This document shows positions 1 through 54,785 of a DNA stretch of 64,000 bases, piece after piece. Source of the DNA: Saccharolobus solfataricus P2 (GTDB lineage Archaea; Thermoproteota; Thermoprotei_A; Sulfolobales; Sulfolobaceae). Positions within the stretch are counted from its first letter, which is position 1. Every line of letters begins with the position of its first letter. The stretch is taken from the NCBI RefSeq assembly GCF_000007005.1, contig NC_002754.1. One strand, 5' to 3'. The position numbers and the translations under genes are program-made. The notes below the pieces were generated by a model that worked only from the letters and a program-made list of their open reading frames with translations, was not told the origin of the DNA and made no database searches.

Positions 1-102
1 GGCACCTAGGGGGAAGGACGTTAACGTTCAAGATGTTGATGTGGGTGATGTGCTGGACTCGTTGTCCCAGTAGGTTTGTTAGAGGCGGAGCATGTAGTGC
101 CT
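1..102 (+). mobile_element. 3' end of IS110-family element (ISC1491-like)
   Basis: Near-identical to 12385-12486 and to the reverse of 53157-53258; ends GTAGTGC-CT. Confidence 0.9.
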
Positions 103-775: not shown

Positions 776-1014
776 TCTCTATCCCTTATTACATCATTTG
801 AGGTTGGCAAATCAAAGAGTAAGCCTTCTTTTAACCACTTCTCTGTTAATTCCTTAACTTTCTTCTTTCTCTCAATCTCTTCCATAGCCTTACTCAAACC
901 ATAAGATATAATCAAGTTAAAAGCCTCATTCTTTGATTTAACTATACCTAACTCAACCATTTGCTCTGCAATACTATAATACTCATCCTTTACCTTTATT
1001 GTTACTATCCTCAT
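772..1014 (-). CDS. vapB: VapB ribbon-helix-helix-type antitoxin
   Basis: 80 aa, IVTIKV strand plus helices, 4-bp overlap with PIN gene. Confidence 0.8.
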   Translation of the reverse strand: MRIVTIKVKDEYYSIAEQMVELGIVKSKNEAFNLIISYGLSKAMEEIERKKKVKELTEKWLKEGLLFDLPTSNDVIRDRE

Positions 1015-2470: not shown

Positions 2471-3069
2471 AGCGTAGGGGTAATTGGAATAGACGTATCA
2501 AAAGAACACTTGGTAACAAGTAAGGGGAGGGTGAGAAAATTCACAAACAACGAGAAGGGCTACGAAGAAATACTAACCATGAAGCCAAACATCATCGTAA
2601 TAGAACCCACAGGAGTATACTCAACAAGACCTTGCCAATACTTCAAAGAAAGAGGAGTGAAAGTCCTACTAGTCAGCCTTGCTATGGAAAGAAAAGGACG
2701 TAAGGGGAAGAAAACAGATTTTTACGACGCAGAAAAACTTGAAAACATGGTAAATAAGTCTAGAGAATACGTTAACAACCCCTTGAAAGAGTTAGTATCA
2801 CTCTACCTCTTCATGAAGGATGTGCAAACGAAACAAGAGAACAGGTTAAGGAGAGCTCTCTTCCTCGTGAGCGACGAGGAGAAGTTGAGCGAGGAGAGAT
2901 TGGAGAAGTTCTCTAAGGGAGACTTCTCTGACGTAAAACTGTATCAACTGGAATACACTGGTACAGTACTACGTGAGATTCAAGTCCTAGCGAGGACACT
3001 AATTCAAACACGAGAAGAGTTGAAGGAGGTGAGGAAAATGATAGAGGGTAATGTGCCTCAAGACCACGT

Positions 3070-4118
3070 TAGTGTTTCCGAAAAGTTTATAGATTAGTAT
3101 TACCAGATTGAACTATGCAAGATTTGGTTCAAGCTTATAAGGAAGAGAAGAACGCGAGAATTAAGGAGAGGATTCTTGCGGTGAAGCTGCACGTAGTTGA
3201 TGGTAAATCGGAGAAAGAAGTTTCGAAAATGCTTAACAAGGGCTATTCCACGATAAAATTGTGGATTGGCAAGTACAAGAAAGAAGGTCTTGATGGACTA
3301 AAGGACAAGCCCAGATCAGGAAGACCCAGAAAAGTAGAAGAGGAAAAGATAAAACAAATTCTGGAAGATAAGCCCCAAAAATACGGAATACAACAAGAGT
3401 ACTGGACAATGAAAACACTCAAGATAGCACTACAAGAACAAGGAATAGAATACAAGAAATCCAGACTATACGAACTAGTCCACGAACTAGGATACAACCT
3501 AGTAAAACCCAGACCTACCAACATCCAAGCAGAAAAGGACAAGTGGGAAGATTTTAAAAAAAATAAAGAAATTGGAAAGAAAGGCACTATTCTTTCTAGA
3601 CGAGTGTAGGACAGTAATTAGCACGTCAATTAAGAAGGTTCTAGCTAAGGTTGGCAGTAAGCCCGTAATGCGCGTCAATATAGGTTTTTCCTCAATCTAT
3701 GTTATTCTAGCTATAAACGCTTGGACCGGCGAAGTAGTGGTTTCTCTTGCTAAAAGGCCTAACTCTGAATCCGTTAAGTATTTCTTGAGGTACTTTAAGA
3801 GGCGTGTGGGTAGTGGTAGGGTTTACATGGTCATGGATAATTACTCTCCTCACAAGACTAAGGGTACGCTTGAGGTTTGTCGCAGGAAGGGTATTCATCC
3901 CGTGTTTACTCCTCCTTACTCGCCTGAGCTTAATATGGCTGAGGCGGTCTTCAAGTCCCTCAAGAACTACATGAGCAATAAAATATTCTATACGATAGAA
4001 GACGTTAAAAACTGTATTAAACAGTTCTTTGAAGAAAATAAGTATAGATTTAATCTTAATGCAATAACATACCTAGGATTAGATAAAATTGAAGTCTAAG
4101 AACTTTCCGGAAATACTA
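3070..4118 (+). mobile_element. ISC1048-like IS630-family IS
   Basis: 1049 bp, TAGT..ACTA TIRs, GT duplication; HTH ORF 3115-3609 and DDE ORF 3572-4099 joined at an A-run. Confidence 0.9.
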
Positions 4119-4493
4119 GTGTTACTCACGATTTCCGGAATAGGGAAACTGGCAGCTGGGATTATAATTGGGATTGTGGGTGATATTAGGCGCTTCCCAA
4201 GACCTGAATCCTTCGTTGCTTATTGCGGTTTAGACCCGGTAGTTGAGAGGAGTGGTAGGATTGAGGTTAGAAAGGGTATCTCCAAGAGGGGTAACAAGTA
4301 TTTGCGTAGCTTGTTTTATTTCCTTGCCGAGACTCAATATTCGCGTAACCCTACTCTCCTTAAGCTCCACGAAGCTCACAAGGACAAACTGAAGGGTAGG
4401 AAACTGTACACTGCCTTAGCTAGGAAGTTGGCTAGGATAGTGTGGAGTGTTTGGTATAATAATAAGCCTTATGAGGTGAAGTGACCCTCCCCT

Positions 4494-9744: not shown

Positions 9745-10039
9745 GCGCATACAAGAATTTACTGCAAATTGGAATGCAAGTTTCTAGTGGAGCAAGAGGC
9801 TTTCTTATCTCTTTAGCTTTCAGAAATACGGACCCACAGAACAGTATTGAGATATGGTTTCCTATAGATGGATATCTTGACCTACAAAGAAACGAGAAAG
9901 GATATATAAGGAATGAGTACGTTTGCAGGATTTTAGAAACCAACCCATACGTTGCATCTCCTACGGGGAATTCACGCAAAACTAGAGAACGAGTAAAACC
10001 AAGTATTACAAGAGAAAAACAAATAAGCAAGAAAGAAGA

Positions 10040-10170
10040 AAACAACATAAGCCCAGTCGCAACATGGGGATAAAAACCCCATTAGATGAGGCTGGCTGTG
10101 AAGCCCCTAGAACGATCTAACAAGAGGGGACAAAACCCCGAGTAGGAGTGTGCAAGTAAATTTTTCTAGG
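10040..10170 (+). ncRNA. Candidate bridge RNA of ISC1491-like element
   Basis: Twin GGGGA-AAAA-CCCC hairpins; GTAGGAG (10142-10148) complements left end CTCCTAC. Boundaries approximate. Confidence 0.6.
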
Positions 10171-10482
10171 GGCTGAAGGTAGTTAATATTATGCGAGAAA
10201 AACGTGGTATTATGATAGTAAAGAATATCTCGCATACACGAGCAATATTCTATCATGGAAAGTGAGATTAAGACAAGGGGTTTCGCAATAGACGTTTCAA
10301 GGGACAAGTTGACGGTAGTGAAAGCTGAACTTGTAATAACGCAAGAGAAAAGGGAAGTAGAGGTCAACGAGGTTAGGGAATTCAAGTACGACAACGAGGG
10401 AATAGAAGAACTAATCAAATTCCTTGGCGAATATAAGGAAGGGATAATGGAGTCAACCGGACCGTACTTCTTCTACCTACAC

Positions 10483-22133: not shown

Positions 22134-23492
22134 CAGTATGGGAATCTCATTTTTCTTGTAAAAATGATAATATATGTAAGATTGAACCGCACCAGTTTTA
22201 TTCAAATATAACTGCATATATTTTATGAAAATGACAGTTAATAAGTCAGTTTTCAATAGCAGAATATAAATATATAGAATTAATTTCACGTAGCTGGAAG
22301 GAGGTGCATAGGGTTAGCTGGAGTTTAGGGGAATGACGTCTTCACTTCACGGAACGCGCGTCCTTGTTCCACTCTTACCTCCCGATCGAGGAGGTTCGAG
22401 AGGGAGACCGAGAACTCCCACAACTTTACCTTCCTCCAAGAACGGATCAAGAACCAGACATTCAAGAGAAGATAGGAAAGCAGAACGAGAACCAGTTCCT
22501 TCCTCACGTCACAAGTCCTAGTCCTGATCCTGAACTCCTCAAGAGAGCGAAAAGCATTCTCAATCCCCCACCTCTCCCTATACATCTCGGCAAGGACTAT
22601 GGCATCATAAAGATCCATCTCCCTCCTCACGAGGAAGGCAATACTCTTGCCGTCTTCCTTCCTCAGAATAATGAGATAAGCTCCACTCCCATGTCTCACG
22701 CAGAGAAATCCAGTATATCTAACTCCGCCAAAACTCACATCCACATCCTGCAACATCCCCTTGTACTTCTTGTACATCTGGGCCTTGGCAGATATGACGA
22801 AGTCCAAGCCCAACTCCAAGAGGTATCTAATCACTTCGTTCACCGCGAACTCCTTGTCCGCGAAGACCATGACGAGCCTCAGCTTGTCCTCCTCCAACTC
22901 CTTCACGATTACCTCCATCACCGCCTTGAAACCTTCAGCTACGTTCTTCACGGTCACTGGGATCACGTCCAAGAAGCTCCTCGTCCTCCCCAGGAGGAAG
23001 ATCGCAGCTTGAACCAGTCCCCACGACGTCCCCTTAGTTGGCTTTATCCTACTCAAGAAACTCTTGTCAGCGTGATATTGAGGTATGGCATGGAAGTCCA
23101 CTGCTACCCTCCTGTCCCTGACTCCCCTTAACGTCATCCTCCCCATCTTCCTCAACGCATCCCTCACGTCCTCAACTTGAACCGCGTTCAACTTTCTCAA
23201 CGCTCTTCTCCCATCTTTCCCCAACCTGCTCAAGTAGCTCCCACTCGCCTTAAGCAAGGCACTGAGGAGTTCCTCAGGGAAAAGTATTTTAGTGAGGACC
23301 GAGTAAATTATCTTGAGGCGGACCTGGCGAAGTCCCGGTTGAACTTCGCCGGTTTAGTTGTATTCTCATGCTTCATATGTTCAAGTCCGCCCTCGTATAT
23401 ACAAACTTTTCTACAGAAATTCTCATCCTCTCAACTTTTTCTGTATTTCATTCATCTCGTTTTTTTACGAGAAAAAAGAGATTCCCATACTG
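22134..23492 (-). mobile_element. ISC1359-like IS, full length, 1-bp frameshift near 23318
   Basis: Exactly 1359 bp between TIRs; one C missing relative to the 57607 copy. Confidence 0.92.
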
Positions 23493-33760: not shown

Positions 33761-33892
33761 ATAAAGTTTTTCTCGGTTATCCGGGTTTCACCCTTCTGGC
33801 AATATTAATATTTATCATTCTGTTTATCTATTCGTTCAGATAATTACATTCCGGACACTCTCACGTAAGGGATCTATAGTCTTTTTCTTAAT

Positions 33893-33959
33893 AGGCACTA
33901 CATGCTCCGCCTCTAACAAAGTGACCGTAGCAGATCGGGATTCTCTGCCACCGTAGGAG
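33893..33959 (-). mobile_element. 67-bp miniature IS110 (ISC1491-like ends)
   Basis: CT-CCTACGG left end, 30 unique bp, TTTGTTAGAGGCGGAGCATGTAGTGC-CT right end. Confidence 0.75.
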
Positions 33960-37104: not shown

Positions 37105-38097
37105 ATGAGTAGTGAAAGATTGATTGACGAGATCTTAAAGAACCCACAGCTTATCTCAGCACTGGCCGATAAAGTTTATGAAAAATTAAAGGACGAGATT
37201 GTAATAAGAAAATTAGAGGAAAACACAAAGAGCATTCAAGCCCTACAAGAGGCTATAAAGAGACATGGGGATGCGATAGTTTCACTCCAAGAGGCTGTAA
37301 AGTCCTTACAAGAGGAGGTGAAGAGACAAGGTGAAGCCATTGTATCACTCCAGAAGACTGTTGAAAAACAAGGTGAAGCCATTGTATCACTCCAAGAAGA
37401 GGTGAAGAGACATGGGGATGCGATAGTTTCACTCCAAGAGGCTGTAAAGTCCTTACAAGAAGAGGTGAAGAGACAAGGTGAAGCCATTGTATCACTCCAG
37501 AAGACTGTTGAAAAACAAGGTGAAGCCATTGTATCACTCCAAGAAGAGGTGAAGAGACATGGGGATGCGATAGTTTCACTCCAAGAGGCTGTAAAGTCCT
37601 TACAAGAAGAGGTGAAGAGACAAGGTGAAGCCATTGTATCACTCCAAGAAGAGGTGAAAAAGCATTCTAAAGCTATTCTTAGGCTTGCTAAGAGTCAAAA
37701 AAGACTTTCGATTGAGTTGGGTAGTTTCACTTCGAGGGCTGGTAAGGGGTTGGAAAGAGCCATGCTAAAACTTTATAAAAAGTCTTTAGAATTGCACGGT
37801 GTAGATCCCAAGAGAGTTAAACATGGCAATATTGTCGATACTGTTGGTATCATAGAGAAGGGTAGGTCCTTTGAGGTTGACTTTTACGAAACTAACGACT
37901 ACATCTACGTTTTCGAGATAAAGAACTTCTCTGATAAGGACGTTATTGACCAAGTTTTCGTAAGGAAGAAGTTGTTCTCGGTCTTGTATAACAAGCCTCT
38001 AAAAGTATTTGTTGTTACTAATTACATAGAGAGGGATGTTAAGGAGAAGCTTGAAAAGGAGGGAGTAGAGATTATTGCCTCCCACGTTATTGACTAA
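37105..38097 (+). CDS. Coiled-coil PD-(D/E)XK nuclease (DUF3782/DUF1626-like)
   Basis: Heptad stalk followed by EVDFY..YVFEIKN. Confidence 0.8.
   Translation: MSSERLIDEILKNPQLISALADKVYEKLKDEIVIRKLEENTKSIQALQEAIKRHGDAIVSLQEAVKSLQEEVKRQGEAIVSLQKTVEKQGEAIVSLQEEVKRHGDAIVSLQEAVKSLQEEVKRQGEAIVSLQKTVEKQGEAIVSLQEEVKRHGDAIVSLQEAVKSLQEEVKRQGEAIVSLQEEVKKHSKAILRLAKSQKRLSIELGSFTSRAGKGLERAMLKLYKKSLELHGVDPKRVKHGNIVDTVGIIEKGRSFEVDFYETNDYIYVFEIKNFSDKDVIDQVFVRKKLFSVLYNKPLKVFVVTNYIERDVKEKLEKEGVEIIASHVID
37261..37655 (+). repeat. 147-bp (49-aa, 7-heptad) tandem repeat, about 2.7 copies
   Basis: AGACATGGGGATGCG at 37261, 37408 and 37555. Confidence 0.95.
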
Positions 38098-53074: not shown

Positions 53075-53156
53075 TTAGCTAAAAATAAACTAACTGCGTC
53101 ACTATTGAGTTAAATACTCAGAGATTCATAAGTGTTGTTATAGTCTTTTTCTTAAT

Positions 53157-54629
53157 AGGCACTACATGCTCCGCCTCTAACAAACCTACTGGGACAACGA
53201 GTCCAGCACATCACCCACATCAACATCTTGAACGTTAACGTCCTTCCCCCTAGGTGCCCTAAAACTCTTCTTAACATCGCCCTTGTAAACACCATCCTTT
53301 ATAACGTGATAACAAATACAAGCAAGCTTCCCACCAAGAGCACAAGTTTAGTAGCACTCTTCCACCTGGAGACAAGCCTATCGTAATACTCCTTAAAACG
53401 TTCAGACTTCCTAGCAACCCTAGCAACCAAGAAAAAAGCCCTACGCAAATACTTATTACCCCTAATCATACCAGAGTGAGACTCGCTCCCACCACTCTGC
53501 TTAGTCCTGGGAGCAAAACCAGCATAAGCCCTAGCCTTAGAACTGGAAAAACGAGAAACATCACCGAACTCAGCGTAAATGGTTGCAGCACTAATCAAAC
53601 CAACTCCCGGCTCAACTCGACCACAGGCTGAGGAATCTTAGAAATTATCATGTCCTCAACTTCCTTAACCATAGCCTCCAAGCTCTTCAGTAAGTCTACC
53701 AGCTGCTTCAAAGCTAGCTTCTCAGCATCATTCAAACTTCTCCCTAACTTCTCCTTCAACTCGTCCCTTTCCTCCTTGCTCAGCCCTTCTCCCCTACTTA
53801 ACTTCTCCAGCAACGCCATTCCCCTCTTATCAAAGGGCTCTATCTTGTATCCCGCCATTTCTAGAAACTTCCTTATCTCGTTCTTTACTTGTGTTATCTT
53901 CCTCATCAAGCTCTCCCTATACCTCGTTAACTCCCTCAATTCCCTTATTTCCCCGGTCGGTATGTATGACCCCTTAACTGCTCCCAGGATGAAGGCTTTT
54001 GCCAGTCTTTGCGCGTCTAGCTTGTCGGTCTTCTTTCCGAATACTTCCTTCAAGTGTAAGGGATTTATTAATGTTACCTTATATCCCTTTTCTGTTAGTT
54101 CTTCGTGTAGGTAGAAGAAGTACGGTCCGGTTGACTCCATTATCCCTTCCTTATATTCGCCAAGGAATTTGATTAGTTCTTCTATTCCCTCGTTGTCGTA
54201 CTTGAATTCCCTCACCTCGTTGACCTCTACTTCCCTTTTCTCTTGCGTTATTACAAGTTCAGCTTTCGCTACCGTCAACTTGTCCCTTGAAACGTCTATT
54301 GCGAAACCCCTTGTCTTAATCTCACTTTCCATGATAGAATATTGCTCGTGTATGCGAGATATTCTTTACTATCATAATACCACGTTTTTCTCGCATAATA
54401 TTAACTACCTTCAGCCCCTAGAAAAATTTACTTGCGCACTCCTACTCGGGGTTTTGTCCCCTCTTGTTAGATCGTTCTAGGGGCTTCACAGCCAGCCTAT
54501 TATCTGGGGTTTTTATCCCCATGTTGCGACTGGGCTTATGTTGTTTTTCTCCTTCCTTGCTTATTTGTTTTTCTCTTGTAATACTTGGTTTTACTAGTTC
54601 TCTAGTTTTGCGTGAATTCCCCGTAGGAG
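53157..54629 (-). mobile_element. ISC1491-like IS110, full length, frameshifted
   Basis: 1473 bp between CT cores; ORFs 53595-54332 and 53299-53598. Confidence 0.9.
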
Positions 54630-54785
54630 TTGTAAAGAAGTAAAAAGGACTATTAACTGAGGGAATGCTAGGAATTGCTGAGTTAAGGATTTAACTGGCT
54701 ATATTTTGTATTGACAAAAGCTAATTCTCTTCGCATCTACTAAGAAAAAGACTATATAAATAAATATCATAATTAGAACTACGTT

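What the first reader, a model, noticed from the sequence alone, without database searches (positions are those of the whole stretch)
9958..10254. Third IS110 family (ISC1491-like): twin-hairpin guide RNA with a copy-variable loop
Seen: the ~300-nt leader has two GGGGA(T/C)AAAA(A)CCCC hairpins, each followed by a 9-10 nt segment ending in AG. The second, GTAGGAG, complements the element's left end CT-CCTAC. The first differs between copies. The 54.5 kb copy has TAATAG (54497-54502), complementary to its own flank CT-ATTA. The 10 kb copy has ATTAG (10081-10085), complementary to its flank CT-AAT but in a shifted register. GTCGCAAC before the first hairpin matches left flanks at 5-6 of 8. I found no left donor guide matching GTAGTGC, so the architecture may be atypical.
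Basis: partly seen in the sequence, partly recalled or inferred. Interest (0 to 1): 0.75.

Follow-up and report, generated by a model that had tools for sequence, protein, structure and literature searches.

The report
Archaeal ISC1491 bridge (guide) RNA
The 300-base leader of the Sulfolobus insertion sequence ISC1491 encodes a two-loop "bridge RNA" of the kind IS110 elements use to choose where they insert, so it is a real but expected member of a known system, with an apparently missing fourth guide segment.

Summary
The element is ISC1491 (IS110 family) of Saccharolobus solfataricus. Copy A (9958-12486, +) is broken by an ISC1048-like insertion. Copy B (54629-53157, -) is uninterrupted. Only the right end of copy C lies in the window (1-102).

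The leader folds into two stem-loops, each with a large internal loop around a GGGG/CCCC hairpin. I compared about 60 copies from Saccharolobus, Sulfurisphaera, Stygiolobus and hot-spring metagenomes. Everything is conserved except the two sides of the first internal loop, and both sides track the insertion site:
- The 5' side repeats the top strand of the left flank (0 of 20,000 permutations reach the observed match).
- The 3' side is the reverse complement of CT plus 3-5 bases of the right flank (0 of 100,000).

In the second loop, GAGUAGGAG pairs with the element's left end, CT-CCTAC. S. tokodaii carries a compensatory change (CCCAC with GAGUGGGAG).

There are two caveats. Copy A's loop does not match its flank in the family register. 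No left donor guide was found in any of the five lineages scanned.

All S. solfataricus copies also carry a 7-nt deletion that splits the recombinase gene. Verdict: a new member of a known kind, of moderate interest.

The parts
9958..12486 (+). ISC1491 copy A with its CT core on both sides (9958-9959 and 12485-12486). It is interrupted at 10483-11534.
   Evidence: Ends were defined by comparing copies in different contexts. Coordinates were checked.
9960..10254 (+). Non-coding left end (leader) of copy A. The ATG of the recombinase is at 10255.
10046..10100 (+). Stem-loop 1, the target-binding loop. Basal stem CAUA-GCC / GGC-UGUG. 5' guide (LTG-like) at 10055-10065, AGTCGCAACAT. Hairpin at 10066-10080. 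3' guide (RTG-like) at 10081-10090, ATTAGATGAG, followed by GC-U.
   Evidence: Folds. Guide-flank correlation.
10102..10174 (+). Stem-loop 2, the donor-binding loop. 9-bp basal stem AGCCCCUAG / CUAGGGGCU. 5' side AACGATCTAACAAGA at 10111-10125. Hairpin at 10126-10139. Right donor guide GAGTAGGAG at 10140-10148.
10483..11534 (-). IS630-family (ISC1048-like) insertion that breaks the recombinase gene of copy A. A twin copy lies at about 3067-4122.
   Evidence: Pfam DDE_3 plus HTH domains. Repeat arms I4 and I5. 2-bp duplication seen.
12460..12484 (+). Right end of copy A. Conserved subterminal box TTGTTAGA at 12460-12467 and tip GTAGTGC at 12478-12484.
53157..54629 (-). ISC1491 copy B with its CT core on both sides. 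It is uninterrupted, but the recombinase is split by a 7-nt deletion, and a further 4-nt deletion lies near the C-terminus.
54487..54540 (-). Stem-loop 1 of copy B. LTG-like AGTCGCAACAT at 54531-54521. RTG-like AGATAATAG at 54505-54497, where TAATAG is the reverse complement of CT|ATTA.
54413..54485 (-). Stem-loop 2 of copy B. Right donor guide GAGTAGGAG at 54447-54439.
1..102 (+). Right end of a third copy (C), cut by the window edge. Body to position 100, CT at 101-102, right flank AATATGAAAAAGACTATA.
33893..33959 (-). 67-bp miniature derivative made of CT, CCTACGG, 30 unrelated nt, the last 26 nt of the right end and CT. It lies in the same kind of target site.
   Evidence: An identical copy lies at a different site in L015.
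54700..54756 (+). Unoccupied paralogue of the S. solfataricus target repeat (..TTCGCAT|CT|ACTAAGAAAAAGACTATA).

Best explanation
The left non-coding end of ISC1491 encodes an IS110-type bridge RNA of roughly 130 nt (about 10046-10174 in copy A and 54540-54413 in copy B).

Stem-loop 1 is the target-binding loop. Its 5' strand has the sense of the top strand of the left target, seven bases plus the core C or CT, so it would pair with the bottom strand. Its 3' strand, ending in AG, is complementary to the core CT plus 3-5 bases of the right target.

Stem-loop 2 is the donor-binding loop. GAGUAGGAG pairs with CT-CCTAC, the junction-proximal left end of the excised element.

The DEDD/serine recombinase encoded downstream would use this RNA to bring donor and target together and recombine at the CT core. 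That leaves the element flanked by CT, with no inverted repeats and no duplication.

Shown here:
- the architecture and its conservation;
- the guide-flank correlations;
- the compensatory change on the donor side;
- the CT junctions.

Inferred by homology with IS621 and not shown here:
- transcription of the RNA;
- binding of the RNA to the recombinase;
- a circular intermediate;
- the chemistry of strand exchange.

In this genome the system is probably crippled. Every S. solfataricus copy has the recombinase split by the same 7-nt deletion, and copy A is additionally broken and has a scrambled target guide.
For: - Protein: DEDD_Tnp_IS110 and Transposase_20 domains. Intact 385-386-aa relatives keep E66, D103, D106 and S282 invariant. 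NCBI names them 'IS110 family RNA-guided transposase'.
- Layout: the left end is 297 nt and the right end about 35 nt, as in the IS110 group.
- Junctions: CT lies at both junctions in every copy.
- Structure: two stem-loops with internal loops in the single-sequence folds and in the RNAalifold consensus of 25 distinct leaders. 99.3% of cells are paired, with one compensatory CG-to-UA pair.
- Variability: only the two sides of loop 1 are hypervariable. 27 LTG x RTG combinations were seen.
- Left guide: own flanks score 6.0 of 9 against 3.9 for other copies' flanks, 0 of 20,000 permutations. With 13 distinct guides permuted among flank sets, again 0 of 20,000. Examples: L019 UGUCCUCC with TGTCCTC|C, and L054 UAGAGAAC with TAGAGAA|C.
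- Right guide: 16 distinct pairs match 3.6 of 5 positions against 2.0, 0 of 100,000 permutations. L002, L041, L032 and L040 each match the core plus 5 nt.
- Donor guide: GTAGGAG is complementary to CT|CCTAC in all lineages. S. tokodaii has CCCAC with GUGGGAG.
- Literature: this matches the IS621 description, in which the first loop is variable, the second conserved, the 5' sides pair with the bottom strand and the 3' sides with the top strand.
Against: - No segment of the leader matches the right-end tip GTAGTGC|CT in either sense, so there is no classical left donor guide.
- The helices are almost invariant, so structural covariation is thin: one compensatory pair.
- The register of the left guide is not uniform. 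The core C sits at guide position 9 in 'CA(A/U)' guides and CT at positions 8-9 in 'CUAA' guides. Several copies are offset by 1 or 3 nt.
- In S. solfataricus the left guide matches its sites at only 4-5 of 7 positions.
- Copy A's right guide does not match its flank in register.
- There is no expression or biochemical evidence. Rfam has no matching family.
Confidence: 0.88

Rival explanations
1. The difference between copies A and B in the loop is mutational decay of a dead copy, perhaps one complex indel event. It is not retargeting that matches each copy to its own flank.
For: Copy A is interrupted by an IS630-family element. Its loop predicts CT|CATCT, but its flank is CT|AATAT. A population variant AGATATTAG (L017, L068) would match copy A's site over 8 nt, so copy A's loop looks derived and damaged. 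All S. solfataricus recombinase genes are split.
Against: Five or six of about 27 differences between A and B fall in one 8-nt patch. ATTAG, complementary to CT|AAT, is still present 5 nt out of register. Other S. solfataricus copies also differ mainly in this patch (AGATAATAG, AGCTAATAG, AGATATTAG). Family-wide, the patch tracks the flank.
Confidence: 0.4
2. The leader is only a cis-acting 5' UTR structure that controls recombinase expression, as an attenuator or translational control element, and it has no guiding role.
For: It lies directly upstream of the recombinase ATG. Small RNAs had been proposed to modulate expression in ISPpu9 (cited).
Against: A regulatory UTR gives no reason for its two loop strands to track the left and right flanks of each insertion. 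It also gives no reason for loop 2 to co-vary with the element's own end. In addition, 341-bp derivatives keep the leader but have no recombinase gene to regulate.
Confidence: 0.03
3. It is a C/D-box-like archaeal guide sRNA, used for RNA modification, that happens to sit in the IS.
For: IS110 recombinases and Nop5 are proposed to be related, and their RNAs share bulged guide loops. An invariant CUGA follows stem-loop 2.
Against: No RUGAUGA C box lies 5' of the guides (read directly). The guides match flanking DNA and the element's ends, not rRNA or tRNA. Rfam gives no C/D family hit on this strand.
Confidence: 0.01

Closest known systems
IS621 / IS110-group bridge RNA (Durrant et al. 2024, PMC11208160; Hiraizumi et al. 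2024, PMC11208158)
   Same: - The RNA is encoded in a long left end upstream of a DEDD plus Transposase_20 recombinase.
- It has two stem-loops with internal loops around apical hairpins. The first loop is variable and the second conserved.
- The 5' strand of loop 1 has the sense of the left-target top strand. The 3' strand of loop 1 is complementary to the core plus the right target.
- The 3' strand of loop 2 is complementary to the core plus the right donor (the left end of the element).
- The core is CT.
- Two bases after the right target guide (GC) are complementary to the last two bases of the right end, like a handshake guide.
   Different: - The host is an archaeon (thermoacidophilic Sulfolobales).
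- No core-adjacent left donor guide is present.
- In one guide class the left target guide covers only the first core base.
- No conserved 5' stem-loop was seen.
- No bacterial-type junction promoter can be expected.
- None of these elements has been tested experimentally.
seekRNA of ISEc21 (IS110 type) and ISEc11 (IS1111 type) (Siddiquee et al. 2024, PMC11187229)
   Same: A short RNA from the non-coding region carries stretches that match both strands of the target. Mini-elements with only short ends move when RNA and transposase are supplied in trans. That fits the 67-bp and 341-bp derivatives seen here.
   Different: In the IS1111 type the RNA lies downstream of the gene and the element has long subterminal inverted repeats. 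Here the RNA is upstream, and only GTAG/CTAC is repeated near the tips.
ISC1190 and ISC1229 (the other Sulfolobus IS110-family elements listed in Durrant's ISfinder analysis)
   Same: Same host genus and same IS family. Both were included in the published phylogeny of 274 ISfinder recombinases.
   Different: ISC1491 was not found in the 200 (of 222) supplementary files of that paper that could be searched. No paper in the searchable library mentions ISC1491. Their RNAs were not compared here.

Membership tests
IS110-group bridge RNA system (IS621 type) | Recombinase with a DEDD (RuvC-like) N-terminal domain and a Transposase_20 domain carrying the catalytic Ser | tested here: met
   Pfam PF01548 (E 7e-21) and PF02371 (E 4e-16). 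E66, D103, D106 and S282 are invariant in intact relatives. In the window copies the gene is split by a 7-nt deletion.
IS110-group bridge RNA system (IS621 type) | Long non-coding left end upstream of the gene, short right end, no terminal inverted repeats, element flanked by a 2-nt core (CT) | tested here: met
   The left end is 297 nt and the right end about 35 nt after the stop codon. Junctions read CT|CCTAC...GTAGTGC|CT in all copies.
IS110-group bridge RNA system (IS621 type) | RNA with two stem-loops, each with a large internal loop | tested here: met
   Minimum-free-energy folds (z down to -4.2). RNAalifold consensus of 25 leaders. 99.3% of cells are paired, but there is only one compensatory pair.
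IS110-group bridge RNA system (IS621 type) | Left target guide: the 5' side of loop 1 matches the top strand of the left target plus core | tested here: met
   Own flanks score 6.0 of 9 against 3.9 for others, 0 of 20,000 permutations. The conservative test with 13 guides also gives 0 of 20,000. The register varies by 0, +1 or -3 nt.
IS110-group bridge RNA system (IS621 type) | Right target guide: the 3' side of loop 1 is complementary to the core plus the right target | tested here: met
   16 distinct pairs, 0 of 100,000 permutations. Copy B matches the core plus 4 nt. Copy A has no match in register.
IS110-group bridge RNA system (IS621 type) | Right donor guide: the 3' side of loop 2 is complementary to the core plus the left end of the element | tested here: met
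   GUAGGAG against CT|CCTAC in all lineages. S. tokodaii has GUGGGAG against CT|CCCAC.
IS110-group bridge RNA system (IS621 type) | [quoted passage not shown] | tested here: not met
   No match of 6 nt or more to the right-end tip in either sense in five lineages. The 5' side, (CGAUCU)AACAAGA, is instead complementary to a box 20 nt inside the right end.
IS110-group bridge RNA system (IS621 type) | Handshake guides: two nt 3' of each AG, complementary to positions -2 and -1 of the other substrate | tested here: inconclusive
   The GC after the right target guide fits the right-end tip ..GC|CT in all lineages, but it never varies. The two nt after the donor guide (UG, GU or GA) do not track the left targets.
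IS110-group bridge RNA system (IS621 type) | RNA is expressed and binds the recombinase, and there is a circular intermediate with abutted ends | not testable with these tools
   No expression or biochemical data were available. No paper mentions ISC1491.
IS1111 group / downstream seekRNA | Guide RNA in a long right end, with 7-17-bp subterminal inverted repeats | tested here: not met
   The right end is about 35 nt and the RNA lies in the left end. Only GTAG/CTAC is shared near the tips.
Archaeal C/D-box sRNA | A C box (RUGAUGA) and a D box (CUGA) bracketing the guides | tested here: not met
   No RUGAUGA lies 5' of the loops. Rfam gives only a sub-threshold plant snoRNA hit on the opposite strand, outside the loops.

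The most novel reading that the evidence does not exclude
ISC1491-type bridge RNAs may recognise the right end of the element without the core-adjacent left donor guide of IS621. Instead, the 5' strand of loop 2 (UCUAACAA) would pair with the top strand of a conserved subterminal box, TTGTTAGA, 20-27 nt inside the right end. That would be a different donor-recognition geometry.

The box and the loop strand are both conserved down to a relative with 54% protein identity. The 67-bp miniature element keeps the right end exactly from this box outward. The copies that lack CGAUCU in the loop strand nearly all have damaged ends.
Probability: 0.15. Interest if true: 0.65.

Novelty: new member of a known kind. 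Interest (0 to 1): 0.45.

Why it matters
- It gives a concrete, coordinate-level description of a bridge RNA in a thermoacidophilic archaeon, with about 27 natural guide combinations and their insertion sites. This is a natural reprogramming series for a recombinase that presumably works at 75-80 C.
- It shows that the guide-flank logic established for E. coli IS621 holds in Sulfolobales.
- It identifies intact candidates for experiments in S. shibatae and S. tokodaii. The P2 copies are all frameshifted.
- The missing left donor guide, the leader-only 341-bp derivatives that carry their own guides, and the CCT-triplet slippage at the left junction are testable departures from the IS621 model.

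Tried and rejected
- Rfam scan of the leader at E up to 10: nothing relevant.
- Scan of the GTDB species genomes with a protein profile: only two close loci. The Saccharolobus genomes were not returned.
- Viral contigs: no copy of the conserved leader motif.
- Left donor guide. I looked for it (a) in the 5' strand of loop 2, (b) in the tail after the donor guide (sol-clade GUAG-GAG-UGC resembles GTAGTGC with a 3-nt bulge but is not conserved), (c) in the invariant CAAGTATTAC block upstream (7 of 10 matches to CATGTAGTGC, more likely a TATA-like promoter element), and (d) by an exact-match scan in five lineages. None was convincing.
- Handshake-guide covariation on the donor loop: no signal.
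- The 54%-identity relative L071 was fetched to obtain covariation. Its loop 1 and donor guide fit its flanks and left end, but its loop-2 basal stem does not fold convincingly.
- Short-read (Logan) contigs were left out of the right-flank test. The IS is longer than the reads and the joins may be chimeric.
- C/D-box reading: rejected because there is no C box.

Full report
**What is in the window**

The finding lies in the left end of an insertion sequence that occurs three times in the window.
- Copy A is on the + strand. Its core CT is at 9958-9959, its body runs to 12484, and a second CT is at 12485-12486.
- Copy B is on the - strand, from CT at 54629-54628 to CT at 53158-53157.
- Copy C shows only its last 100 nt plus CT, at 1-102.

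Copy A is interrupted at 10483-11534 by an IS630-family element (Pfam DDE_3 plus HTH domains) that has a twin at about 3067-4122.

The first ORF is identical to a protein that public sources call 'First ORF in transposon ISC1491 [Saccharolobus solfataricus P2]'. Intact relatives are named 'IS110 family RNA-guided transposase'. Pfam finds DEDD_Tnp_IS110 in the first ORF and Transposase_20 in the second.

Intact 385-386-aa relatives exist in S. shibatae, S. islandicus and Sulfurisphaera tokodaii. All S. solfataricus copies lack 7 nt (CAAGATT) at the KIPGVG motif, which splits the gene.

**Check of the observation**

The leader folds better than shuffled controls, with z = -3.3 and -3.6 for the 297-nt leaders and z = -4.2 for the 141-nt core.

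The fold is two stem-loops. Each has a basal stem, a large internal loop and an apical GGGG/CCCC hairpin.

Copies A and B differ at about 27 of about 1470 positions. Five or six of these lie in the 8-nt patch just 3' of hairpin 1.

**Related copies**

I collected about 60 copies:
- by protein look-ups in Saccharolobus, Sulfurisphaera, Stygiolobus and Sulfolobales HS-7 genomes;
- by one exact-pattern scan of metagenome contigs with a conserved 23-mer that links the two stem-loops (27 loci).

Ends are the same everywhere: flank|CT|CC(T/C)ACGGGG ... GCATGTAGTGC|CT|flank.

In an alignment of the leaders, everything is conserved except the two strands of the first internal loop. These are 11 nt between AAGCCC and GGGG, and 7-9 nt between CCCC and GGCUGG. 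I saw 27 different combinations of the two strands.

**The first loop tracks the target**

The 5' strand has the sense of the top strand of the left flank. Examples:
- L019: guide A-UGUCCUC-C-AA, flank TGTCCTC|CT.
- L054: guide A-UAGAGAA-C-AU, flank TAGAGAA|CT.
- L023: guide AA-CCACA-CU-AA, flank CCACA|CT.

Over 23 distinct guide/flank pairs, own flanks score 6.0 of 9 and other copies' flanks 3.9. No permutation in 20,000 reached the observed mean. Permuting 13 distinct guides among their sets of flanks gave the same result.

The 3' strand ends in AG and is the reverse complement of CT plus the first 3-5 bases of the right flank:
- L002, L041, L032/36 and L040 match the core plus 5 nt.
- L019, L070, L015 and copy B match the core plus 4 nt.

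Over 16 distinct pairs, no permutation in 100,000 reached the observed match. Short-read contigs were excluded from this test.

**The second loop tracks the donor**

GAGUAGGAG, 3' of hairpin 2, is complementary to CT|CCTAC, the first seven bases of the inserted element. In S. tokodaii the left end is CT|CCCAC and the loop reads GAGUGGGAG. That is a change on both partners that keeps the pair.

**Comparison with the known system**

This is the architecture described for IS621 and the IS110 group:
- The RNA comes from the long left end.
- The first internal loop is variable and the second conserved.
[quoted passage not shown] - The CT core is included in the pairing.

The GC that follows the right target guide is complementary to the last two bases of the right end (..GC|CT). 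That is the position of the handshake guide in IS621. It never varies here, so this is only a resemblance.

Consensus folding supports the two stem-loops: 99.3% of cells are paired, against 29-58% when the partners are slid. The helices are nearly invariant, so only one pair shows a compensatory change.

**What does not fit**

(1) I found no left donor guide. Nothing in the leader matches the right-end tip GTAGTGC|CT in either sense in five lineages.

Besides the donor guide, the only other conserved complementarity is between the 5' strand of loop 2 (UCUAACAA) and a conserved box, TTGTTAGA, 20-27 nt inside the right end.
- It is kept in four of the five lineages scanned, including the 54%-identity relative. 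S. shibatae keeps 7 of the 8 bases.
- It never varies, so there is no covariation to support it.
- It is absent from L002 and from a group of leaders that lack CGAUCU. Most of that group have damaged ends.

I treat this as a hypothesis only.

(2) The register of the left guide differs between two guide classes, and several copies are offset.

(3) In S. solfataricus the left guide GUCGCAA-C matches its sites at only 4-5 of 7 positions.

(4) Copy A's right guide (AUUAGAUGAG) predicts CT|CATCT, but its flank is CT|AATATC. ATTAG is present but displaced by 5 nt. The variant AGAUAUUAG, seen in two other S. solfataricus assemblies, would match copy A's site over 8 nt. The simplest reading is that copy A's guide was rearranged after insertion in a copy that is dead anyway. 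This is an inference.

**Literature and novelty**

No paper in the searchable library mentions ISC1491. The 200 searchable supplementary files of Durrant et al. list ISC1190 and ISC1229 but not ISC1491. Archaeal IS110 recombinases are known, and NCBI already uses the name 'RNA-guided transposase'. The finding is therefore a new, well-documented member of a known kind, with one feature (donor recognition) that may differ.

**Verdict**

- The mechanism is very likely bridge-RNA-guided recombination at CT (confidence 0.88).
- The window's own copies are probably inactive.
- Interest is moderate (0.45).

Noticed in passing
window 33893-33959 (-); L015 about 935-999 (-): A 67-bp miniature ISC1491 derivative made of CT, CCTACGG, 30 unrelated nt, the last 26 nt of the right end and CT. 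It is identical at two different sites whose flanks have diverged. It keeps the right end exactly from the TTGTTAGA box outward and carries no guide RNA of its own.
   Followed up: partly
L032/L036 (341 bp), L040 and L044 (342 bp), metagenome contigs: Non-autonomous elements that keep the whole bridge-RNA leader and about 45 nt of the right end but have no recombinase gene. There are two different guide sets, and each matches its own flanks (right guide: core plus 5 nt). These are guide-carrying miniature elements that presumably use a recombinase supplied in trans.
   Followed up: partly
L022, L029, L039 (same site as L038/L041, which lack it), L070: An extra CCT triplet lies between the core CT and the left end (CT-CCT-CCTACGG). 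It shifts the left-guide match by 3 nt. It may come from excision at a CT three bases upstream, when the flank ends in CTC as it does at L019.
   Followed up: partly
window 53593-53620 (-) and the equivalent in copy A near 12020-12045; L015, L056: All S. solfataricus ISC1491 copies, at five or more sites, share the same 7-nt deletion (CAAGATT) that splits the recombinase into two ORFs. S. shibatae copies are intact. Either the copies spread after the deletion or they were homogenised. Copy B also lacks 4 nt (GGCT) near the C-terminus.
   Followed up: partly
window 54630-54756, 53139-53156, 103-120, 33875-33892; L030, L021: S. solfataricus copies sit in a repeated, imperfectly palindromic unit of about 60 bp (..TATAGTC(C)TTTTT.. 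|CT| ATTAAGAAAAAGACTATA). An exact 18-nt right half is followed by six different contexts. An unoccupied paralogue lies at 54700-54756, and unoccupied units occur in other species. This is a REP-like target, as for IS621 and ISPpu9.
   Followed up: partly
window 10111-10125 with 12460-12467; 54476-54462 with 53183-53176: The 5' strand of loop 2 (UCUAACAA) is complementary to the conserved right-end box TTGTTAGA. This is the only complementarity to the right end that is conserved across lineages.
   Followed up: partly
window 53100-53160 against L060-L066; L072/L073 (P2 genome 1,069,414-1,075,989): Copy B's left and right flanks belong to different neighbourhoods in other strains (MFS transporter on the left, phenol hydroxylase/FeS-assembly genes on the right). 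P2 also has two partial copies inverted around an ISC1048. This points to inversions by recombination between ISC1491 copies.
   Followed up: no
window 10483-11534 (-) and about 3067-4122: Two 98-99% identical copies of an IS630-family element of about 1050 bp (ISC1048-like). One is inserted in the recombinase gene of copy A with a 2-bp duplication.
   Followed up: no
window 37233-37673: Three tandem copies of a 147-nt unit (100, 93 and 84% identity) reported by the repeat finder. Not examined.
   Followed up: no
window 22132-23318 with 57781-58967; 1095-2021 with 58048-58974: Other long repeats (94% and 93% identical), presumably further IS elements. Not examined.
   Followed up: no
left-end positions 41-52 of all copies (window 9998-10009 in copy A): The block CAAGTATTAC is invariant even in the 54-63%-identity relatives. 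It may be a TATA-like promoter element that would place an RNA start about 15 nt upstream of stem-loop 1. This is inference only.
   Followed up: no
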